Assembly: GCA_965637545.1 (NCBI GenBank)
Contig: OZ281494.1
Coordinates: forward strand, 14,384,001 to 14,448,000
Direction: 5' to 3'
Length of the DNA: 64,000 bases
From: Phallusia mammillata
Taxonomy: Eukaryota
How positions within the stretch are numbered: the stretch's first letter is position 1; each line of letters starts with the position of its first letter. Below the pieces are notes generated by a model. That model did no database searches and was not told the origin of the DNA. It was given only the letters and a program-made list of their open reading frames with translations. Shown piece after piece: positions 1 to 28,700 of this stretch. The position numbers and the translations under genes are program-made.

Positions 1-158
1 GACTCGTTTGAGTTGATGATAACTATGTTCCGTGAATATTAGTATTGAAAAACTGGGGTCACTTTACTTAAAGTATAAAAGTCCTCATCTTAGCTTACAA
101 GATTACAGTATACAATGTTATGCTTTGCTAACAAAGCTCAAAACACAACATCTTGCAG

Positions 159-3100
159 ACGTTTACCGTATTGGATTCAGACGGCACAGCTTTAGAACTA
201 AACACCACCATTACTGGACTCACCTCAGGGTCTCTTTACACGGTGACTGTCACCCAATCTACTTCTGTTGGCATTGGTTTCGCGTCACCTATGTCAGAGA
301 TAACAAGACGTGAGTTGTTGGTTTCAACCTTGTATTGACTCACAATCATTTTTTTCCATGTTGAATTTAGCCGCTGCAACTGTGGCTGGAGCACAACCTA
401 ATGTTAGTGTTACTCAAAACCTTCTTGGCGCATCTGCTACTCAGGCATTTGCTATTGCGAATCCATGCAATAATGTGTCTGCGTTTTTCTCTCTTGCCTC
501 CGGGACAATCCTTGCTGTGGACGTGATTATAAGGGAATCAGGCTCTTCAGCCACGAGTAAGTTTTTCAATTTTAATATTCGTTGCATTCATTGTTTTTCC
601 TAAGACAAATTTCACAACAAAAACTCCAATTTGTGGAATTTTTTAAATAAATATATCAAGTAACTGTGTTACGGAATTATTTCGGGCCCGAACCCTGCAA
701 TAACGGCCCACCACCAAAGCCAAAGATGCCGCGCACTGGTTCAATTTTGGGCGGCGCAACTTTATTGAAACTATAAAATAAACAGCGATAAAAGTAGCTA
801 CGTTAAAATGAAACAACACGTGGCGACCTTTAACAAACCAACACCTCGCGTTACACGCGCCACCCAGAGAAAAAGTCTGTTTTACATAGCAGAAGCAGCT
901 TTTGCAAGTGCCTGATTGGTAAAGCAGCGCGTTCCAGGCCAATCAGCGCAATCCATGTAGCCCTATAGGTAAACGAAGGGAATGCTAACAACGTGCCACA
1001 AACCAAATAACACAAGAGAAAAGAAATGCGCGTGACGGTGCAAAATCAGGAAAACAAAGTGAACAAAACAACATAATTGTGCATGACCAAAATATTTGGT
1101 CACAACTGTTTATTTTTGTTTCTGACACTATGCTTGACAGATTTTTTTTTTTTTATGCCAATAAGCAACTAATCTTTCTTAACATTAATCTACGCGATTG
1201 CGGAACTACAGTTAATCTCTTTTCTGATCAATCTTAAAATGTCATTTACCATACCTTTGTTGCATAGACATAACCTACTGGGCTGAAGCATCTGTGTTGA
1301 CCCCAACACCTCAATACTATGCTGCTACAATTCCATGCCTTTCAGCATTTGGAAGAAAGAAGAGAAGGGTGTCTAATGACGAACAAATATTTGTGTGTGG
1401 TAAGCATTGTATGTGTTACACCATGATTTAAAGCAATACGTTAATTCAAAATCGTTTTGCCATCTATTCTGCTTGTGACAAGTCAATACGTGCGTGTGCT
1501 GATTTAAACATTTTTGTCATAGGTCACGACCAAACTTGTGACCCAGCGTTGGTCTCAACTATTTGCAATGGACCACTTGCACCAGGTCGATCGTACGAAG
1601 TTGCTTTTCGAGCTGACACCGGAGCTCCTGAAGGAAAATCCGATCTGACCGATTTCTCGCCCCCTGTTGCTACCGGTATTCTGTAATCGTTTTGATTATA
1701 ACGTAGCCGAGATTTATTATTTGCAGTACAACGAGTTTCGTAAAATATACCGTTGGTAATAAACATCTACATTTTGTTCTAACTTAGGGGTAGAAGGGAC
1801 CACACCGTTACCATCAACAAATGAGACAAATTCCACTTTAACGAGAACCTCAACAACAGAATCAATATTCAATTTAACAACCACAGTGCCAACATCAACT
1901 ACGATACAAACTACAGCAGCAACAGCAACGACCAGTTCAACCACTTTAGCAACTACAACAACTGAAGAATCGACCACATCTACTTCTCCCAACCAAGGTA
2001 TTTTTGTTTACCGATACTGATTGATTATGATTGTAAAAGCTTAATTTACATCAGACTAAATGCATGTAGCTAGAAAATTATTTTTCGTCGCAGTATTGCA
2101 GCCAGTACCAGGAGCAAGACCAAACATTGAAGTCAGCCAAGAACTTCCCGGGCGACTAAGGGAGCAAGCATTTGCTGTGCAAAACCCCTGTCTTTCACTC
2201 GATCGTTTGTTTGATGCAAGTGATGGTGATGAAACGAACGTAGAAATAGTTGTCAAAGAAGAAGATGTGAACCCGGAAGGTAGGCGTGCAGTGCTTTGTA
2301 AACTTGAGGTATAATAAACTATGGAAAGTATACTGCCCCGAGGCACAAATAAAGGCATCGGGTATGTCGCGATACTGCAAAAAAAGAACTCTTAAACGGT
2401 CTTAGTGGCTGAAATTTTGTCATCTTATAGTGTTAACATTTAGGGTTGTTTGTGGCGTTCAGTTAAGTTTGAATGTAGACAGCTATAAAACAGAAAGTAG
2501 GCCGGCACGAAATAGGTAGCAAACTTTACTTACGTGTGTACTCTTAATCTGTCTGATTTTAGGAGCGGAAATAGGTGTTTGGGCAACTGCTATTACTCAG
2601 GACCCGATTGGTCTCTACGTTGCTGCATCCGTGCCTTGCTCCTCATCGAAACGAAAACGCAGAAATCTCGACCCCGATGATGAACGCTTTGTCGTGGGTA
2701 AGTGTAAAAAATCTTTTCTGGATCAGTTAACCTTACATTCCCAGGTCTCACACATTAAAAAATTGCAACTAATAAGATGTGAAGCAACAATCAGCAAACA
2801 ATAGGATTTGCAACAATTTTTGTATAGGTATGGACCAGACGTGCGTAAGAGACAGACCGGAAGTGTGCAATGGACCTTTACCCCCAGATCGTTCATTTCA
2901 GGTTGCGATGCGTTCAAGAAACGAATTTGAAACATCCCAACTAACAGAATTTTCTGACCCAATTTCTACAATAGGTTCGTAATTGGTTTTAACCACCATA
3001 TCAACGAAAGCTTTAAACTTTCATTTTTAAGGTTGTGGACAATGCAATGACGGTACTGTTTGCAGAAGTGTTTCCCTTGAAGGCGATGAGCCAGAGTTAA

Positions 3101-6100
3101 TGTGTGTGTGTGAAGGATCCGAATGTTCAGATCGAAGCGGTAGGAAAACTTTAGTTAAGACTTATATATGCTACAACAAATAGGTCATGAGGCAAATATA
3201 TTTTTTGCCTTACATTTAAGTTTACTAAACAGCGATTTCAAGTCGTTTACGTTTCCCACAACGGGACATTTTTAAACTGATATCGTTTTTCTTAAGAACT
3301 GACCAACAAAATTACACTGACGTATTAGTACAATTAATACAAATATGTTAAAAATTCTTCCTTTGTTATCAAGGAAAGACACAGGCTACTCTATTTTATC
3401 TACAAATATGTCAATTAAATATTGCTATCTTATGTGCAGTTAGTTGTGTGGGAAGGAATATAAGCAAGGATGGCATGACTTTTCAGTTTTCTAACACCCT
3501 CGTGAACCTGATCGCGTATTCCACACAACGTTGCAATTTTACAGGTGTGTAATCTATTCCGTGACCTTAATTAAGGTTAAACAAAGTGTGTTGTCCAGGT
3601 CAACCATTAGCGTCTGTTCCCTGCATTGAAAATCAAACGCCAGATGGTGTTTTTGTGACAAACTTTGATATATCTTCCTTGGTTGTGATACCGTGTAGAG
3701 ATTTATCAATTCCGGACGTTGTACTAATGGTAAGGTTATATGCTGCAGATTCAGTCAAAAACGAGTAGATTCGTTGATATTTTGCCCTAAAACAATCCAT
3801 GATTTGTTCACACAGAACGACGTGGAAGTGATTACCGAAACTGAGCTAGAGCAGGTGTTGGTAGAACTTGACGTCAGAACTTCTGATGTCAACAACATCA
3901 ACGAAGAAGATGTCGCCTCCACTGTAGATTTCGTCGTATCCGTTGATTCAACTCCAAGAGCTGTGATGGCAAGTACTTTTTTATGTATTAGGATGCTGAA
4001 ATGGCATCTATGTAGTGTTTTTTGCAGAATCACGTGTGTACGCTTCACAAGTACAAGATGTGGTCGAAATAGATTCAAATCAAAACTAGAACTAAGTTTT
4101 ATAAAACTGTTTTCTTCAGATTACACCATTTTCGTACCGAAGCGTGATCGCCATAGGAGACCACGTAGGCAGTTTTCAGATGTCCAATCGGAGTACAGGG
4201 GTTGTTAATCAATCGGCTTTCATCGAATCACTAACTTCGCTAGCTTACCGTGTACCGGCGCTTTCAAACCAAACATTGGACGTCTTGACTCCAACTGTAG
4301 CGGCAAGAGTAAGTTTTTTGTGCAAACAATTAATAATCACCAAACAATCTCACACACAACAATACTTACCACAATGTTAATGCTGAAATAAAACATGAAA
4401 TCTTACACCATAATGTGTCAATGTCGATAACTTGTCATGTTATTTGCATCTAAAGGTGCAAGATATAACGGAACCGAATACATCTGTAACATACCAACCC
4501 GAGATATACAACGCAAGTGGCCAGTTATTCTCACCGGCATTTATTGAAGTGCCACAAGAAGCTGTTTTGCGTGGCCAATCACCCAGCAATGACGAACAAA
4601 GTGCTGTACAGTCTCGAACAACCGGTATTCAAGTAGTAAGAGTTGTATTCTTACTCCATAACTCGAGCATTCTTTTCCTTTCCAACGAAACTTCAAGTGT
4701 GGTAAGATATTTAGTCGGTGTGATTTTGACGCCAAACTTTGATTCAAACACGCCAAATTGTATCAGGTCATTTCGGCAAACGTAGAAGGAACTCGCGTGG
4801 AGGGTCTTACGAACTACGTAAACACGACGTACAACAACGAACCTTCAAGAGCAGGGTTTTCCCAGAACGACTCTTCAGTCAGTGTAAGCTCAACCTGTTT
4901 TGACCAACTTAATTTATTACCTTGCTCGTTGTTAAGTAACCAATGTCAAATTGAAGAGAAGACGTCTACTCAAGTTTCATTATTTCATATTGGAAACTCA
5001 TTCATAGCATTCTAAGAGATGTGACTTAAACCTCAAAGCTTTAACGTTAGGACAAAGTAAACTATTGCATATTTAGCCACCCACAAAGACGACTTTTACA
5101 TTACTAGGCCCAATTTGTAAATCAAACTTGCGTGTTTTGGAACTTTACAATCGATGATTGGTCAACTGAAGGATGCTGTCTTGTACCAGATACAGATCCA
5201 CCTCAATGTAGGTGCAACCATCTGACGAACTTTGCTCTTTTGGTGGTATGTATTTTTATTTATGATCTTCACTTAGGTCATTGCAACAACTAAGTTCTAA
5301 AAAGTGTGTGGTAGTTATTTTACCCATTAGTTTTAAAGCACATGCTGTTTGCAATGCCTTTGTATGACTGCTTTCAAAGCTTTGGCATAAAGAAGTAGTT
5401 AACTGTAATGAAAATGCTTTTCAGAGTATTTACGATGTATCTGCTCATGTCTCGCTGCGAATTGTCACATACGTTTGCGCGTCCCTTTCTATTATCAGTT
5501 TGTTGGCAACTGCGGGTATTCTGCTGGCTTCAAGGTAAATTTATTTGAAACAATATTTTTTATAGTAGAAATTTATTGTTGTTTTTTCAAAAAAACAAAA
5601 CATACAATTGACATGTCCAGACATTTTAATAACTTACTTACCACTTTACTTTCATTTTCAGTGAAATAAGGAAACGGATACCCATGAAAGTTCTAATAAT
5701 CCTTTGTGTCGTTCTTGCTATCGTCTATCTCATATTTATGGTTGGTATCGACAACCGAATGAACGAGCCCGGATGCATCGCCAGTGCCATATTGCTGCAT
5801 TATTTCCTTTTAAGTGCTTGGTGCTGGATGGCGGTGTACGCCAATGTTCTTTACATGGCTCTTGTCAAGGTAAAGAATCAAGTGTTACTTTTGAACGGCC
5901 ATCAACTCCAAATACTTAAATCTTGTGTGTAGGAATACTGAAAGATATGGCATGTTCCTCTATTTATCAATATCTTGTTGTTTGCACGATATGTTTAAAA
6001 ATCTCCCTTTGACAATATAATTTTTGTTCTTCAGGTTTTTGCAACATTTCAGGAGCATACTTTCAAACAAGCTTGTCTGTTTGCTTTTGGTGTTCCCGCA

Positions 6101-7948
6101 TTGATTGTTGCATTGAACGCTGGAATAACAGATGCCACCAAACCGGCATCAGTTGCTTCATCAGTATGTGAAGAGGGCATAAATCGCGGTAAACAAGTCA
6201 TTTTAAAATAAATAGCGCATAATTACACAACGTGATTTAAATTTATGGTTTGTCTAGCTACATCTTCCCCGTTTGCTGAAGCGTTTCTTGCTGAAAACAT
6301 GTGTTGGATCAAAGGCTACTCACTTTATTTCTCGTTCCTTCTCCCGGTGGGAGTAATTCTACTCTACAACATCGTGGTGTTCGTTTTGGTCATCAAATCC
6401 ATCACCGCTAGAAGGGTAAAAAATTTATACATCCGTGAAAAATCTTCTTTAAATTGAAATAGCATGTAAAGTCAGGAATGTGCGCACCCGGTAGTGCGCT
6501 GGCGCCCCACTTTAGAAATGGTGCGATTTCTGAAAACGCGTGGTATTGAACGCATGTATACCGCAAGGACACGTGTATCGACCAATACAGAAATTCACTT
6601 GCCACAAAGCACGTTTCAATCATGTACGAATACAATCAAACACATTTAATCAGAGTTTTGTGTGAAGAAAACATACACTCACAAAATGACATATATATGG
6701 AATCACTTGCATGCCAGTAGTAACGCTTACCATAGTTTTGGGCCAGGGTTAATAGACAACTAAAACGTTGAAGGACATTGACAAAGTAGATTTCACACAC
6801 ATAATATGCATACTGAATTATACGGTAAACTTTTAAGGACTGTTTACAACAGACTTTGCAAAACCAACTTTACCTTACCTATTCGTTTCACAGCAAAGTC
6901 TTATACGAAGCCTAATATCTGTTAATAAAAAAGACCCAAAACAGCAATTTAACGCACTGCATGTGGTAGCAACAAAACTCAATTTAAATTTTCCGAAAGC
7001 ACAGCAGAGAGAAAGAAAGTTCAGGGGGATTGTTATGTCAAAAGGCAGGTTGGCATTGTGGAACAAACAGGCCACACGTGATGTGACGCAGTTTTACGGT
7101 TGAGTGATTTACGATGTTACTAAGGACTATTACACAATTGTGCTACTAATAAGTGGGATTTGAAAATGCTAACCTGCCTTTGTAAACAAATAAAGAAATA
7201 TTATTCAACGCAGACACTGTTAAGAGTAACTTACCAAAATCTTCCTTGGACATTTTGCAGACACTGTTGCAAAGTAAAGTTAAGCATTTGCCAATTGCCA
7301 TGACAACCGGCGCCACACTTGGGTTGGTATGGATCCTTGCATTCTTTATGATGTTGGCTAACGATCCGGTTTATCTTACTATAATGTCATGGATATTCTC
7401 CATTGCATCGGCTACACAGGTAACTTTTTTTTAAATTGCAATTTACGTTGTTTCGTTTGTTAAAAATTTAAACTAGATTGATTGATTCATCGCTAGTTTG
7501 GGTTAAATGACTTTGGCGGAAACAGTTTTAATCAAAAATAAAATGCGAAAATATTTGCAATATAATTTTGCGATGAAAATAACAACCCAAACTTGTTTTT
7601 CCACATCACACATTAACAGTTTTACAACTTTACCTTTTATTATGAGTTTGAGTGCCCTTGTCACTATATGTTTTTCACCTATAAACGGTTCCGCCAAAAT
7701 TTGGGTAAAAAAGGTCTTCGTCTTTTTGTGGAACCCCGCTACAAACCAGTGTTTTACATTTAACCTCTCAGGGCATTCTTATCTTTTCCCTGACGTGTTT
7801 GCGGAAGGGTGACGTAAGAAACTCTTGGATTCCTGTTTTGTGCGAGTTTGTTCAATCATGTAACCGATCACAACCAGCGCACAACAAGGAACCAAGACGC
7901 ACTTTGCCGACTTTACAAACAAGCGACGGCTCTGCTTTGCCTATGTAA
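159..7948 (+). CDS. Adhesion GPCR paralog 1, 5' end outside window: FN3 - RPTP-juxtamembrane-like module - Thr-rich stalk - second RPTP-like module - EGF-like - HRM-like - GAIN/GPS - secretin-class 7TM
   Basis: Phase-consistent exons: 159-309, 371-556, 1268-1399, 1523-1675, 1788-1997, 2094-2279, 2563-2697, 2828-2974, 3032-3139, 3440-3544, 3599-3729, 3816-3968, 4120-4308, 4456-4701, 4767-4883, 5108-5245 (GPS: CVFWNFTIDDWSTEGC..CRCNHLTNFALLV), 5425-5534, 5662-5869 (TM3 HYFLLSAWCWM), 6035-6188, 6258-6415 (ECL2 CWI), 7261-7419, 7772-7948 (QGILIF...SALPM*). Exon-for-exon match to the paralog at 27551-33761. Confidence 0.92.
5108..5245 (+). other. GPS autoproteolysis motif exon of aGPCR-1 (HL|T, tethered-agonist-like TNFALLV)
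   Basis: Translation AQFVNQTCVFWNFTIDDWSTEGCCLVPDTDPPQCRCNHLTNFALLV matches the GPS consensus C-x2-W...W...GC...C-x-C-x-HLT-x-F. Confidence 0.95.
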
Positions 7949-10128: not shown

Positions 10129-12620
10129 ATGGAAACACTACGGAACATTGAAGAACTTGGTGCACTGATTGTAACAAAAGGAACAGAGGAAATGGTTTTT
10201 AGATTAAAAATACATTCAACAGAAGAATGGGATAAGTGGCTTGAGTCTTTTTGTGAAATTTCTCACACTAGCTGGAATGTGTATCGAACATTTCCTAGGC
10301 CTAAAAGATATGTTTTTAGGAAAACTTTCAAGTGCCACCTCAACCAGTACCGCCAACATGAAACCAGTGCAAACAAATCCAACACTTTGTGCCCTGTGAC
10401 CATGAATGTTAAGATCAAACTTAACACCAAGTCAACTAAACAATCAGATAAGTTGGTTTCCACTCATCCGTGTATAGTAAGTGTGACAGGTAACCACAAT
10501 CATTTGCTTCAAGCTGCCGGAAACCTCGGTCAGCTAAAGATCAGTGAATCTACAAAACAGATTTTCTTTTTGTATTTTCAGCAGGGATTGTCTCCGTCTC
10601 AGGCAATGCAAACGCATAAGACCAAGTTGCTTGTAACAGATGGAATAAGTGCAGTTGCTAACAACTGTCTTAATCCAAAATCACGTTCGATCTACTATCT
10701 CTGGGATGAGTGGCGTAAGTCTAACTTCGGGGCATTTAGTGGTTTAAATTTGTTTTGTGCCATACAGAAGTATGCTAAAGAATCTGAAGCTAAGATCTGC
10801 CTAGAGCAATTTGAAGGATCTTATGTTTGTGCCATTGTGAGCCCGATCATGGAAAGAATCCATAAAATGATGATACAATCTTCTGAGATTGTATTTGTGG
10901 ATTCTACATCCAACCTTGATCAGACTAATGCCTCACTAACAGTCCTATTGTGTGGTAGTCCCATTGGGGCATTACAATTATGAGCTATAATATCCAGTGG
11001 GCAAGACCAACGGTGCTTCACAAAAGGTACATAACTTTTCTAAAAACATGGAAGTTTCCAGACTACATCCAACTTATAATCACATCATTTTAGGCCTTCA
11101 ACTGCTCAAAACCATGCTGGGGGAGTTTGGATTTCACTACACATGCTCACCAAAAGTCTTCATGACCGACGACTGTGCAGCTGAGACCAATGCTCTTCAT
11201 GAGGTATGGCCAGATTCCAGCCAACTTCTATGTATATTTCATGTCTTGCAGGCTGTGTGGAGATGGTTGTTTGCTGTCAAGAATGCCATTCATAAAGATT
11301 TAAGACCAACTCTTATGAAGGCATTTCAAAAGATCTTGTACAGTCAAACAGAGGAAGATTGTTTAAATCCACATTTTGACCTTACCAATTTGTGTGAGAG
11401 TCGACAGTGCCATTTGTTTTTGAGGTATTTAGAAGTTGCAATTTGCATAATATTAAGCAATAATTATAAGCCAGAAAATTATGTGTAATGTATGTTATGT
11501 ACAAAAAATGATTTGCTTTGCAGATACGTTGATCACTGGATGGCTAAAAAGGAGAAATGGTGTTTAGCATATCGCAATGGTTTATTGACTCGTGGGCAAA
11601 ACACAAACTACTGCTGCGAGTCAACCATCCGCATAATTAAGGACATTGTTTTCAACAGGTAAATAAAAAAGCATGATTAATGTTTGTTGTAAAAGTTTTG
11701 ACTCATTCGTGTTGTTTGTAGGTGTAAAGCCTACAATGCCTTCCAGTTGCTGCATTTCGTAACTGAAGTGTACAGCATATATTTTGTCAACCGCATTCTG
11801 AATGTGATTCTTAATCGAAAGAAAAAGATCACTTTAGAATCACCACCATTGGACGTGGATAAGATCAGTCCAACAGATACCCCAACACTTTTTACTGTCC
11901 GCAGTGAAAAGGATGTATCCTATGCGGTTGATGTTGCATGTGGCATGTGCATCTGTCCTGTTGGTGTCAGTGGAGATATGTGCGAACACCAGAAAAGCGT
12001 AATTCTCCATGGTCATCTCCATTCTGACCAGCTGTATCAGGGATCAGCATCTCAAAAACATATGTACGCAAGCGTTGCTGTGGGTCAGGAGCATGCACCA
12101 TATGTGGAATTCTTTGGTGAATTGGCATCCACATCCATACAAGATCATGGTAGCTGTTCAATTGCCATGGAAATTAATCCACCGAGCTCTTCGTCCAATA
12201 ATACTGCTGGGCCCTCACATCAAACAGTGACTGCATGTCCAGACTACACTACTGGGAGCATTTCTTTATTTGAAGAGTGTTCTGAGCTTTTTAAAGACCA
12301 AGCTCTCCAGTGACTTTCATTCGAAGGAAACTTATGAAGCACTAGAAAGATATAAGAACTCTATCTCTTCTGCTCGTTCTGTTGCACAACTAAGATCAGC
12401 ACTTCATTCCTTTGGAAGAAACTCAATTGGCAACCGCAATGCTGGGCGCAAAATCAAATGCCAACCCACTGCAATTGCACGTCGCCGATTGGGAATTAGT
12501 CGGACATCAGCACCGCTTGGAAAAGGTCGACCTCCATCTCAGCTGATTCGAAAAACCAAAAGGCCAAGACATCTTACTGCCAATATTAACAATAACCTCC
12601 CCAATGCCACTGGCCACTGA
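10129..12620 (+). pseudogene. MULE DDE transposase with WRKY/FAR1-like N-terminal region and SWIM zinc finger, disabled
   Basis: Exons 10129-11026, 11094-11424, 11524-11658, 11722-12620. Motifs FKCH...HNH, VFVDST (D1), FMTDD (D2), LLCIFH (CxxH), TNYCCES (E), CICPVG..CEH (SWIM). In-frame TGA at 10981-10983 and an apparent 1-nt frameshift in the T-run near 12288-12292. Confidence 0.88.
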
Positions 12621-25700: not shown

Positions 25701-28700
25701 TACAATGGGATGTGCCTTCAACCCCTGACGGCTTTATAACTGGCTACAAGTATAAGTGACGGGTTGATATAGTTGTCGACTGTCGTACAGTTTTTTATTT
25801 TTTTATTATTTTACGATTATTGTACTGCCCCCGGTTTTAATGCTTTATTGTTTAGTTTAATGCTTTATATTAACTGCTAACTGTGCACAAAGCTTGTATT
25901 ATTTTTGCTGCATCCATTTTTTTAACACGACGTCTTTTTGAAATTTAATTAGAGCAAAAACATCAGATAAAAACGGCAATTAGTAACACTAAAATCAAAA
26001 ATGTCGATGGCGGCAAGGAAACTGCAACAAAGTTTCATTAGCTGTAACTTATCAATAATTATTTTAAGGATTATGTGGGGACCAGGAATGTCATTGACCG
26101 TCGGCATTTCTGTTACTTTGTACGAAATGACGGGGCTAGAACCTTACACAACTTACAACGTGCAAGTCTTGGCCATAACAACTGCTGGAGAAAGTGACGG
26201 TGTTACAGTGAAAGCACAAACTGCCGAAGACGGTTTGTATTGAAAATATAAAAAGCTACTTTTGTAACGAAACAAGTGTTTTAATTAATAGCTATTTTGT
26301 CCCTGTTCTAGTACCCGATCCACCAACTCTCTTCTTGTTTTTAAACGCAAACAATACTTTTACTGTGACTCTTTCCCATGCAACACCACTAAAGGGATTA
26401 GTACTATTTAACGTGCTCACTATAAGGTAATATTTGGAGTTCTGATAAGGAAGCGTGTATTTATAGCAATCATCAAGCTGACGCAACTGTTTCCTTTTTC
26501 AGCCAAGATACCTCTGAATGCATAAGAGTGCTTGATCTAACGTGCTACAACGTTACAGTTGCATTACCGGGTGATCAAACAAAGTATACTACAGATATTC
26601 TGTCAGCTTCTAGGTATGTCATAGATAAAGGCTTCCCGCCTTGGGTGATTATTTCCGCATATGGGCCTTTTTTCATTTATTTATGCGGTGCTCCCCCGCC
26701 TTTTTGGTGTTGGCGCGCTACAAAACTACACTTTGATTTAGCGTTATTATTTCAACCTGCAGTTTGTTCCCAGAGGTAGCAAAGCTATCATTTCCTGTGG
26801 TGCTTTAAAGTCTCTCACTGCTTACTAGTGTGCTACAAAGCATGCAATGGTTGATAATATTGATTTAATACAACAGGTTACGTTTATAGTGTGTCGTTTT
26901 TTTCGTTGAAATTGTGAAAAACCCGTGGAATTGGATTAAAACGCTGATTAAGTTGCTGAGCGGACTTACATGGACGGTTTCCTGTGCTACGTTAAGTGTA
27001 CAAATGTTTATTTTTTAGAACTTTTGTATTTTCTGTGATGGCAAATACGTCTGTTGGATATAGCAACGCAGTTACAACTACAGCAACCACTGCTGCATCT
27101 GGTAACGATAATACAAAAAAATAACAAAAATATTTGCTTGTTGTTTTGTAATAATACGTGTCCCTGTAGTTTGAACTTTCTAATTGGGCATGCTCATATC
27201 ACAGAAATATTATTCGTATGTTGATGTTAAAACAGCCGTCGAGCAGACTACTACAACAGAAGCTATATTAACCTCAACTATACCATTACCAACTACAACC
27301 TTGTCAACAACGACGTCGGTAAACACGTTTCCAGTAACATCCACGACAAAATTAACACTGCCAACAAACGCAACGACTTCGACCACAATACCGACTACAA
27401 CAACAAACACAACTTCAACTACATTACCAACAACTGCAACGATCAAATTTACCACTCAGCAAAGTCAAGGTAGCCTTACTAACCATTACTGAGTGTCACT
27501 GTTCATTTTTATGCAAAGTCTGATGCGACAAATTCGATTTGTTCACACAGTGCTACAACCAATACGTGGAGTGAGACCCGATGTCGAGGTGAGTCAACAG
27601 CTTCCTGGGCGCCTAAGAGAGCACGCGTTTGCCATCCAGCACCCCTGCCTCTTACTTACACGTTTGTTCGTCTCAAATGATGCCCATAGTTCGGTTTTAG
27701 ATTTAGTTGTCAAAGAAGTAGGTGCGGATCATACAGGTGAGCATAGGCCTACAAGTTGCTGTTAATGGTCCAGATGGAATATAGACACGTTTTCGTGATA
27801 CAAATACAAAATAACACCAACCTTCTAAAGTTTACCTCAAACAGTAACAAAGTTGCTGGGCATATACTACCATAAGGTCATATACAGGATGCGTTTGATT
27901 TCTTCTAAAAAAATATATGAAAAAACACCAAGTAGGTCAGTACTCGCAAACTACATATATGTACTTCTATAGAAGACAATGTGCGCCTGGTTTTAGATAC
28001 GGAAATAGGTGTATGGGCAACATCTATTACACAGGACCCGATTGGTCTGTATGTTGCTGCATCCTTGTCTTGCTCCTCATCGGCACGAAAACGTAGAAAT
28101 CTCGATCCCGATAATGAACGTTTTATCGTTGGTAAGTGCAAGCAATATCTAATGAGTAAATGAATAATGATTAAAGTCAAGTAGTGACTCTACTGAAATA
28201 CTTCAATGTTGTGTTCGGAGTTAAAATTTAGAATTAACCCTAAAGTATTTTTTTACTTGAGTAGCCATGTTGCTTGTTGGTTTTATCGGATACCCCTATT
28301 TTATTAAAAAAGGAGGTGTGAGTTTGTAATGGAGCAGTCAATAAGATAACACAATTTCTAGATTCGACGCCAAGCGCGATGTAGAACGTTTAAACATTTA
28401 AAAAATCCAGGTCAGGACCAGACATGCAAGAGAGATGAACTAGAGGTGTGCAACGGACCCTTGCCACAAAATCGTTCTTACGAAGTTGCGATTCGCTTAA
28501 GAAACGTATTATTCACATCCGAGTTAACAGATTTTTCTGAACCGGTCTCCATTTTAGGTAAAGCGTTACTGTTTTATCATTTTTTTGCTGAGTCTCACCA
28601 AAGAAATTAACTTGTTCGTTCCATAACAATTTTTGATTTTAAATCTGCTGTGAATTAAAAGCTTAATTACTTTTAGGTTGCCTTGGACAATGCAATCAGC

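What the first reader, a model, noticed from the sequence alone, without database searches (positions are those of the whole stretch)
371..2974. Adhesion GPCR carrying two copies of a receptor-tyrosine-phosphatase juxtamembrane-like domain, each with a furin site
Seen: splicing 371-1675 gives ..FFSLASGTILAVDVIIRE..YWAE..YYAATIPC..GRKKRR..IFVCGHDQTCDPALVSTICNGPLAPGRSYEVAFRADT..TDFSPPVAT. Splicing 2094-2974 gives a second copy (..IVVKE..YVAASVPC..KRKRR..FVVGMDQTC..CNGPLPPDRSFQVAMRS..TEFSDPIST). A Thr-rich exon separates them. Known: the FS..G....VIVRE / G....C...C[ND]GPL.P...Y....RA.T...FS.PI.T pattern is the membrane-proximal domain of R3 RPTPs (PTPRB/PTPRJ/PTPRQ; Pfam PTP_tm), which is normally followed directly by a single TM and a phosphatase. 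Inference: an FN3 + PTP_tm RPTP-type ectodomain has been exon-shuffled (flanking introns are phase 1) onto a GAIN-7TM. This is an RPTP/aGPCR chimera not matching any vertebrate aGPCR family I know, and it is predicted to be cut both by furin and at the GPS.
Basis: partly seen in the sequence, partly recalled or inferred. Interest (0 to 1): 0.8.

Follow-up and report, generated by a model that had tools for sequence, protein, structure and literature searches.

The report
Adhesion GPCR with phosphatase-type furin modules
A giant, transcribed adhesion-type G-protein-coupled receptor gene carries repeated copies of the furin-site-bearing domain that normally sits next to the membrane in receptor tyrosine phosphatases; I found this domain combination described nowhere, though adhesion GPCRs that are cut by furin as well as at the GPS are already known.

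Summary
The exons, phase-1 introns, both module copies, the Thr-rich exon between them and the downstream GPS/7TM are all there.

The roughly 150-residue module is homologous to the membrane-proximal domain of R3-type receptor tyrosine phosphatases (RPTPs).
- The same genome has an R3-type RPTP on another chromosome: an FN3 array, this module with an RRRR site, a TM segment, then one phosphatase domain. All three module exons match it in order (E 5e-5, 6e-6, 2.8e-8).
- A second RPTP, from another organism, is the best non-family hit of the module profile (41 bits).
- None of the many ordinary FN3 exons scores above 9 bits.
- Pfam PTP_tm is the only recurrent Pfam hit (10 of 20 family members). 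It stays below threshold exon by exon, and so do the two true RPTP exons used as controls.

- The gene has four modules, not two. Two more lie upstream of the window, between FN3 runs.
- About eight paralogous genes carry the module.
- The basic R-x-K/R-R site is kept in 16 of 18 distinct copies.

Still open: RNA contigs confirm several splice joints, but none links a module to the GAIN domain. Cleavage is inferred, not shown.

This scan noted the same domain type earlier on a paralogue 0.93 Mb away (s1-382270).

I left out scoring and folding of the joined, spliced module, because a joined sequence has no reference.

The parts
159..309 (+). C-terminal half of the last ordinary FN3 domain before module A
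   Evidence: Pfam fn3 E 0.0021. An RNA-like contig covers 159-267, and its loose end reads into the upstream FN3 exon.
371..556 (+). Module A, exon 1 (..NPC..ILAVDVIIRESG..)
   Evidence: Joint 556->1268 in run X1. BLASTP to the own-genome R3-type RPTP exon gives E 5e-5.
1268..1399 (+). Module A, exon 2 (..YWAEASVLTPTPQY..C..GRKKRR..); basic site at 1351-1368
   Evidence: RNA contig 1268-1374. BLASTP to the RPTP exon gives E 6e-6.
1523..1675 (+). Module A, exon 3 (..DQTC..CNGPL..SYEVAFRA..)
   Evidence: Pfam PTP_tm E 0.15, profile positions 79-100/126. The alignment of this exon and its own-genome copies (A1) matches the RPTP exon by hhalign at 95% probability, E 2.8e-8.
1788..1997 (+). Thr/Ser-rich (mucin-like) linker exon, phase 1-1
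   Evidence: splice sites read.
2094..2279 (+). Module B, exon 1
2563..2697 (+). Module B, exon 2 (..IGVWATAI..C..KRKRR..); basic site at 2649-2663
2828..2974 (+). Module B, exon 3 (..DQTC..CNGPLPPDRSFQVAMR..)
   Evidence: It is the second-best own-genome hit of the foreign RPTP exon (E 0.0022); the top hit, at E 0.0018, is a paralogue's B-type exon.
3031..3139 (+). Cys-rich EGF-like exon
   Evidence: Sequence. Joint 3138/9->3439/40 in X1. No Pfam hit at exon level.
3440..4884 (+). Pre-GAIN and GAIN exons (several; inner boundaries approximate)
   Evidence: Joints 3541->3596, 4308->4456 and 4700->4766 in X1. Weak GPR128_N hit, E 0.035, on the first of these exons. The same exon order is seen in paralogues L008 and L010.
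5108..5250 (+). GPS exon; H-L|T at 5219-5227
   Evidence: Pfam GPS E 1.1e-14.
5368..7948 (+). 7TM exons (TM1 about 5400-5535; TM2-3 5679-5867; TM4 6033-about 6200; TM5 about 6245-6440; TM6 about 7250-7420; TM7 and C-terminus about 7770-7948)
   Evidence: 7tm_2 E 8.1e-8, 3.3e-5 and 0.056 in profile order. Joint 5867->6033. TM6 and TM7 were read by eye only.

Best explanation
This is the 3' part of one very large adhesion GPCR gene on the + strand. The gene begins about 30.5 kb upstream of the window. Its predicted ectodomain runs CUB, EGF repeats, CUB, then long FN3 arrays. A block of about 6.5 kb (about six FN3 domains plus one module) occurs three times, and the third module of that series is module A of the window. 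Then come a mucin-like linker, module B, an EGF-like exon, GAIN/GPS and the 7TM.

The module is an FN3-derived domain of about 150 residues. It is homologous to the membrane-proximal domain of R3-type receptor tyrosine phosphatases (the Pfam PTP_tm group, with Fn3_PTPRU as a relative). It has four conserved cysteines and a loop bearing an R-x-K/R-R site.

Shown: the exon structure, the homology to RPTP membrane-proximal domains, conservation of the basic site, an intact GPS motif, and transcription of several exons.

Inferred: proprotein convertases of the furin type cut each module in the secretory pathway, as they do in RPTPs. The halves stay together, non-covalently or through the flanking cysteines. 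The mature receptor would therefore be a chain of held-together fragments, with a further break at the GPS. Pulling on the ectodomain could then shed parts of it or expose the tethered agonist.
For: Gene model:
- Exons, phases and peptides.
- GPS and 7tm_2.
- Splice joints seen in the RNA-like run X1 and absent from the DNA run.

Homology to RPTP membrane-proximal domains:
1. The exon-3 profile, searched against 1.84 billion proteins, finds P0018 at E 5.4e-5. P0018 lies in an RPTP gene just before the TM exon and a single PTP domain.
2. A family HMM built without any RPTP sequence ranks that exon first among non-family segments at 41.0 bits. Next come the own-genome R3-type RPTP exon (22.4 bits) and the Fn3_PTPRU exon of another own-genome RPTP (16.5 bits). 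No ordinary FN3 exon exceeds 9.2 bits among 10,029 segments.
3. The reciprocal search of the foreign RPTP exon against the whole genome returns the aGPCR modules as its best hits.
4. The own-genome C2 gene is FN3 array, module with RRRR, TM, then one PTP domain. It matches module A exon by exon, in order, at E 5e-5, 6e-6 and 2.8e-8.
5. PTP_tm is hit by 10 of 20 family members and no other Pfam family recurs. True RPTP exons give the same sub-threshold scores, E 0.11 and 0.017.
6. Protein-language-model neighbours of exon 3 are Fn3_PTPRU and PTP_tm clusters (score 0.92, 180 shared features).
7. In three short contigs from other organisms the module is followed directly by a single-pass TM segment.

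Basic site: present in 16 of 18 distinct exon-2 copies, across this genome and contigs of one other assembly, and also in both R3-type RPTPs.

Precedent: furin cuts PTPRK at a membrane-proximal basic site (PMC12067748).
Against: - Pfam's gathering score for PTP_tm (26.3 bits) is not reached by any single exon, and the spliced domain could not be scored or folded.
- The exon-1 and exon-2 family HMMs give only weak hits on the RPTP exons (4.9 and 5.6 bits). For those two exons the support is pairwise and was examined after the locus had been found.
- No RNA contig covers 1543-2935, and none bridges a module to the GAIN or 7TM exons. Run X1 is only guessed to be RNA.
- TM6 and TM7 are not confirmed by Pfam.
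- In the other assembly, GAIN/7TM exons were not found within the 10 kb fetched.
- Cleavage, and association of the fragments afterwards, are inference only.
Confidence: 0.8

Rival explanations
1. The module is just a divergent ordinary FN3 domain with an inserted loop. Its likeness to RPTP membrane-proximal domains comes from shared FN3 F/G-strand features.
For: The C-terminal half of the PTP_tm profile also weakly hits ordinary FN3 exons of a LAR-like RPTP. The exon-3 profile also collects bacterial multi-FN3 proteins at E 1e-4 to 1e-14 through positions 17-38.
Against: The family HMM does not score any of the dozens of FN3 exons of this gene or of the RPTP loci above 9.2 bits, while RPTP membrane-proximal exons score 16-41 bits. 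The cysteines, the W..P.P.Y motif, the basic site and the FVVG..D.TC..CNGPL motif are shared in order with two RPTPs. fn3 (PF00041) is not among the Pfam hits of the 20 members.
Confidence: 0.06
2. These are two genes rather than one. A secreted or separately anchored FN3/module protein ends before about 3000, and an independent aGPCR starts at the EGF-like exon.
For: No RNA contig bridges the two parts, and X1 has no cover of 1543-2935. In relatives, the module can end an ectodomain directly before a TM segment.
Against: An unbroken chain of phase-1 exons runs from 159 to the EGF-like exon, with no TM segment or in-frame terminal stop. The EGF-like exon also starts in phase 1, so it needs an upstream partner, and it has no start-codon context. 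The order module, EGF-like exon, pre-GAIN exon recurs in paralogues 3 Mb and 60-170 kb away (L008, L010, L011, L013, L014). A pre-GAIN-like exon follows the second module in another assembly.
Confidence: 0.1
3. The repeated blocks are an assembly artefact or a decaying gene, so the four-module protein does not exist as such.
For: Three blocks of about 6.5 kb, 82-86% identical at protein level, lie in tandem, which is a layout that assemblers can get wrong. Expression is low and patchy.
Against: All copies keep open exons and in-frame splice sites. The copies differ by about 15%, too much for a collapsed or duplicated assembly error. DNA depth over the window part is even outside one intronic repeat. 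RNA joints are exact.
Confidence: 0.04

Closest known systems
Membrane-proximal domain of R3-type receptor tyrosine phosphatases (PTPRJ/DEP-1, PTPRB, PTPRO, PTPRQ; Pfam PTP_tm PF18861)
   Same: It is an FN3-derived domain with an insert and the ..VIV.E.G.. and ..G....C..CNGPL...Y.V..RA.. motifs. PTP_tm is the only recurrent Pfam match. It is homologous exon by exon to the domain that precedes the TM segment and single PTP domain in an R3-type RPTP of the same genome and in one of another organism. The outer introns are phase 1 in the foreign RPTP (L021) too, and the first inner intron lies at the same place and phase as in it.
   Different: Here the domain is not next to a TM segment or a phosphatase. 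It occurs four times, between FN3 runs and before EGF-like/GAIN exons. Pfam's threshold is not reached exon by exon. From memory, the human R3 members are not known for a furin site in this domain.
Fourth FN3 domain of R2B phosphatases (PTPRK/M/T/U; Pfam Fn3_PTPRU PF23144), which furin cuts into E and P subunits
   Same: It is a membrane-proximal FN3-like domain with a basic convertase site. It is the nearest neighbour by language-model features. The own-genome Fn3_PTPRU exon scores 16.5 bits with the module HMM.
   Different: PF23144 itself finds only the RPTP on C4 in this genome, not the modules. Likeness to the R3-type genes is stronger.
Human GPR126/ADGRG6 (CUB-PTX-SEA-HormR-GAIN-7TM), cut by furin in its SEA domain and at the GPS
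   Same: It is an adhesion GPCR with a CUB tip and a convertase-cleaved domain ahead of the GAIN domain, giving a receptor held together from fragments (PMC6954182).
   Different: The cleaved domain there is a SEA fold, present once, and its site is not conserved even in zebrafish. Here it is an FN3-type RPTP domain, present up to four times, with the site kept across paralogues and in contigs of another assembly.
Lineage-specific 'unclassified' adhesion GPCRs of ascidians (24 in Ciona; PMC2396169)
   Same: If this genome is an ascidian's, as earlier notes of this scan say (I did not check), this clustered gene family is probably of that kind.
   Different: That survey found only a GPS in 21 of the 24 and reported no FN3 or phosphatase-type domain. 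No orthology was tested here.

Membership tests
Adhesion GPCR (class B2) | GPS motif with the cleavage triad H-L|T/S at the end of a GAIN domain | tested here: met
   Pfam GPS E 1.1e-14, covering 2-45 of 45 profile positions, with the motif C-R-C-N-H-L-T-N-F-A.
Adhesion GPCR (class B2) | Secretin-type 7TM directly after the GPS | tested here: met
   7tm_2 hits in profile order on three exons: positions 29-111 (E 8.1e-8), 103-139 (E 0.056) and 131-187 (E 3.3e-5). TM6 and TM7 were read by eye only.
Adhesion GPCR (class B2) | Ectodomain and 7TM on one transcript | tested here: inconclusive
   Phases and exon order fit, and RNA joints exist on both sides, but no contig bridges 1543-2935.
Pfam PTP_tm (PF18861) | Score at or above the gathering threshold of 26.3 bits | tested here: inconclusive
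   Exon by exon the window's module A exon 3 scores 12.8 bits, and the best E-value in the family is 0.029. Ten of 20 members hit it. True RPTP exons score 13.2 and 15.8 bits. The spliced domain was not scored.
Pfam PTP_tm (PF18861) | Sequence homology to the domain preceding the TM segment of an R3-type RPTP | tested here: met
   against L021 and the own-genome C2 gene (FN3 array, module, TM, one PTP domain).
Pfam PTP_tm (PF18861) | Position directly before a single TM segment and a phosphatase domain | tested here: not met
   In this gene the modules are followed by FN3 domains, a mucin linker or EGF-like/GAIN exons, and the gene has no phosphatase exon. The feature is met in relatives L021, L037, L022, L025 and L026.
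Pfam Fn3_PTPRU (PF23144) | Match to the family profile | tested here: not met
   The whole-genome scan hits only the RPTP at C4:17.76 Mb. The only link is through language-model neighbours and a 16.5-bit cross-hit.
Furin/proprotein-convertase substrate | R-x-K/R-R in an exposed loop, and actual cleavage | not testable with these tools
   The motif is present in both window copies and in 16 of 18 distinct copies. Exposure and cleavage were not tested.

The most novel reading that the evidence does not exclude
The RPTP membrane-proximal domain is an old, portable 'convertase-cut hinge' cassette bounded by phase-1 introns. Animals have placed it in front of different membrane anchors: a phosphatase TM segment, a plain single-pass TM segment, or GAIN-7TM. 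Stacked up to four times in these adhesion GPCRs, it would turn the ectodomain into a chain of non-covalently held links that come apart step by step under force. That would be a graded mechanical fuse acting ahead of the GPS/tethered-agonist switch.
Probability: 0.25. Interest if true: 0.6.

Novelty: new variant of a known kind. Interest (0 to 1): 0.4.

Why it matters
Adhesion GPCRs are thought to sense force through breaks built into their ectodomains: the GPS, and in a few cases a furin-cut SEA domain. Here a different cleavable domain, borrowed from receptor tyrosine phosphatases, takes that place, and its convertase site is well conserved. This widens the set of "pre-cut" domains used by aGPCRs. 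It also gives a clean case of domain shuffling between two receptor classes. It further suggests that the RPTP membrane-proximal domain works independently of the phosphatase, as a cleavage or hinge unit. That idea could be tested in this gene family and in human R2B/R3 phosphatases. The interest is moderate. Invertebrate aGPCRs are known for unusual domain mixes, and double cleavage is already established.

Tried and rejected
- Pfam on single exons gave only sub-threshold hits.
- The whole-genome scan with PF18861 hit only an ordinary FN3 exon of a two-domain, LAR-like RPTP and one noise match.
- The search of 1.84 billion representatives returned no full-length gene model. It gave only ORF fragments and bacterial multi-FN3 proteins, so an architecture census was impossible.
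- The PDB sequence search gave only a chance match to cytochrome c1.
- The two long intron-free PTP ORFs that I hoped were RPTPs are non-receptor phosphatases, one FERM-PDZ-PTP and one PTP1B-like.
- Language-model neighbours of exon 1 were uninformative.
- The exon-1 and exon-2 family HMMs barely see the RPTP exons.
- GAIN/GPS/7TM exons were not found within the fetched 10 kb downstream of the double module in the other assembly.
- No tRNA-like element lies in the repeat-bearing intron.
- Paper searches for PTP_tm or Fn3_PTPRU together with adhesion GPCR found nothing.
- Not done: scoring, searching or folding of the joined spliced module or protein. A joined sequence has no reference, and I found no natural uninterrupted copy of the module.

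Full report
WHAT IS THERE

The window is G000:C1:14384001-14448000 of a 240-Mb animal genome. Earlier notes of this scan call it the ascidian Phallusia mammillata; I did not check this.

- the end of an FN3 domain, 159-309 (Pfam fn3 E 0.0021);
- module A, 371-556 / 1268-1399 / 1523-1675;
- a Thr/Ser-rich exon, 1788-1997;
- module B, 2094-2279 / 2563-2697 / 2828-2974;
- a Cys-rich EGF-like exon, 3031-3139;
- GAIN exons, then a GPS exon (Pfam GPS E 1.1e-14, H-L-T at 5219-5227) and secretin-type 7TM exons (7tm_2 E 8.1e-8, 3.3e-5 and 0.056, in profile order).

All module, linker and EGF-like exons are bounded by phase-1 introns with AG/GT. A and B are 33%, 40% and 47% identical over exons 1, 2 and 3. 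The basic sites are GRKKRR (1351-1368) and KRKRR (2649-2663).

TRANSCRIPTION

One run, coded X1, is guessed to be RNA and is kept as short contigs. It carries the GT..AG joints 556->1268, 3138->3439, 3541->3596, 4308->4456, 4700->4766 and 5867->6033. None of these is in the DNA run X2. A contig at 159-267 continues upstream into the previous FN3 exon. So the gene is spliced as predicted at those places.

X1 has no cover of 1543-2935, and no contig joins a module to the GAIN domain. One transcript is therefore supported only by three things: the unbroken phase-1 chain, the lack of any TM segment or stop in between, and the same exon order in paralogues.

THE GENE IS LARGER THAN THE WINDOW

I fetched 40 kb upstream. 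The gene starts about 30.5 kb before the window with CUB and EGF exons, followed by long FN3 arrays.

A block of about 6.5 kb (about six FN3 domains plus one module) occurs three times. Its module copies lie at about -11.5 kb and -4.9 kb relative to the window start, and at 371-1675. The copies are 82-86% identical in exon 3. The upstream modules splice in frame into the next FN3 exon. So the predicted protein has four modules, three of them between FN3 runs.

Twelve exon-3 copies exist in the genome, all on C1, in about eight genes. One is the second aGPCR of this window (27493-28556). Another is the paralogue at 13.44 Mb that this scan noted earlier (s1-382270).

WHAT THE MODULE IS

Exon by exon, Pfam gives only PTP_tm at E 0.15 for module A exon 3. 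A profile of the twelve exon-3 copies was searched against 1.84 billion proteins. It found 30 proteins: short ORF fragments of true relatives and bacterial multi-FN3 proteins. So the exon is FN3-like in its F/G strands.

First RPTP, from another organism. One fragment, P0018 (E 5.4e-5), lies on a 698-kb contig of another organism, inside an RPTP gene. The order there is FN3 exons, three module-like exons, a TM exon, then a single phosphatase domain.
- Its middle exon carries GRKKR at the same place as ours.
- Its first inner intron falls at the same spot and phase (..EGSRSDS | D-VKTWAEAN.. against ..ESGSSATS | N-ITYWAEAS..).
- Its last module exon hits PTP_tm at only E 0.11. A true membrane-proximal RPTP exon thus scores no better than ours.

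Second RPTP, from the same genome. I searched that foreign exon back against the whole genome. The aGPCR modules came first (E 0.0018-0.0022), followed by an exon on C2. The C2 gene is an FN3 array, a module with an RRRR site, a TM segment, a wedge region and one phosphatase domain, with no second phosphatase domain in the next 8 kb. That makes it an R3-type RPTP.
- Module A matches it in order: exon 1 at E 5e-5, exon 2 at E 6e-6, and exon 3 by hhalign at 95% probability, E 2.8e-8.
- Its exon hits PTP_tm at E 0.017.

Specificity. A local HMM of exon 3, built without any RPTP sequence, was run against 10,029 ORF segments that include dozens of ordinary FN3 exons. It ranks the foreign RPTP exon first among non-family segments (41.0 bits), then the C2 exon (22.4 bits), then the Fn3_PTPRU exon of a two-domain RPTP on C4 (16.5 bits). 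Nothing else exceeds 9.2 bits.

Further support:
- Ten of 20 family exon-3 sequences hit PTP_tm, and no other Pfam family recurs.
- Language-model neighbours are Fn3_PTPRU and PTP_tm clusters.
- In three short contigs from other organisms, the module is followed directly by a single-pass TM segment.

The module is therefore the RPTP membrane-proximal domain, moved into an aGPCR ectodomain. Inner intron positions agree only in part, and identities are 30-48%, so the transfer is old.

In a second assembly (ENA ERZ25067582), two different modules again stand in tandem, followed by a pre-GAIN-like exon (E 0.002). This suggests the double module predates that split. I could not find GAIN/7TM exons within the DNA fetched there.

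HOW IT PROBABLY WORKS

The R-x-K/R-R site sits 4-7 residues after a conserved cysteine. It is kept in 16 of 18 distinct exon-2 copies and in both R3-type RPTPs. This argues for selection on a convertase site.

[quoted passage not shown] Human GPR126 is cut by furin in its SEA domain as well as at the GPS, with the halves thought to hold together until force is applied (PMC6954182).

By analogy, I infer that each module is cut in the secretory pathway and stays assembled. Cysteines lie on both sides of the site, so a disulfide link is possible. The receptor would then be a chain of held fragments ending at the GPS. None of this cleavage is shown.

NOVELTY

FN3-bearing aGPCRs are known, and so are aGPCRs cut by both furin and the GPS. 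I found no paper linking PTP_tm or Fn3_PTPRU to an aGPCR. The Ciona survey saw only a GPS in most of its 24 unclassified aGPCRs. I rate this a new variant of a known kind, of moderate interest.

LEFT OUT

I did not search, score or fold the joined spliced module or protein, because it has no reference, and I found no natural uninterrupted copy. So there is no structure prediction and no Pfam score for the whole domain.

Noticed in passing
G000:C1:0-1.83 Mb (outside the window): There is a very large tandem expansion of tyrosine-phosphatase-domain exons. Well over a hundred Y_phosphatase hits at E 1e-20 to 1e-28 are packed into the first 1.8 Mb of this chromosome. Their ectodomains were not examined.
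   Followed up: no
window 548-1144 (intron 1 of module A): A high-copy repeat: DNA-run depth is about 40-50 times that of the flanks, with many loose ends at 1097-1105. RNA-like contigs there probably come from other copies. ARAGORN finds no tRNA-like part.
   Followed up: partly
window 3440-3544: The first exon after the EGF-like exon (..NTLVNLIAYSTQRCNFTG) weakly matches Pfam GPR128_N (E 0.035). It is the best-conserved pre-GAIN exon in paralogues and in another assembly. It may be a small conserved domain shared with ADGRG7.
   Followed up: partly
L015-L018 and window 1-1675 (G000:C1:14366400-14385675): An in-frame, three-fold tandem duplication of a multi-exon block of about 6.5 kb (about six FN3 domains plus one module) lies inside the gene, with about 15% protein divergence between copies.
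   Followed up: partly
L029 (G000:C4:17754501-17764500): An RPTP with two phosphatase domains. Its Fn3_PTPRU-type membrane-proximal domain holds a strikingly basic exon with several stacked convertase-like sites (KRRRK.., RRRRQ).
   Followed up: partly
G000:C2:13.61-13.85 Mb: A cluster of about nine phosphatase-domain hits lies on both strands. The one I examined is the R3-type RPTP with the module; the others may be tandem paralogues.
   Followed up: no
window 10129-12313: Long transposase-like ORFs (284, 163 and 188 aa) lie just downstream of the aGPCR gene.
   Followed up: no
L018/L016, about 39.3 kb upstream of the window: The TM7 and C-terminal exon of another paralogous aGPCR ends about 9 kb before this gene's CUB exon. 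Its peptide is nearly the same as at window 7770-7948, which shows a head-to-tail gene array.
   Followed up: no
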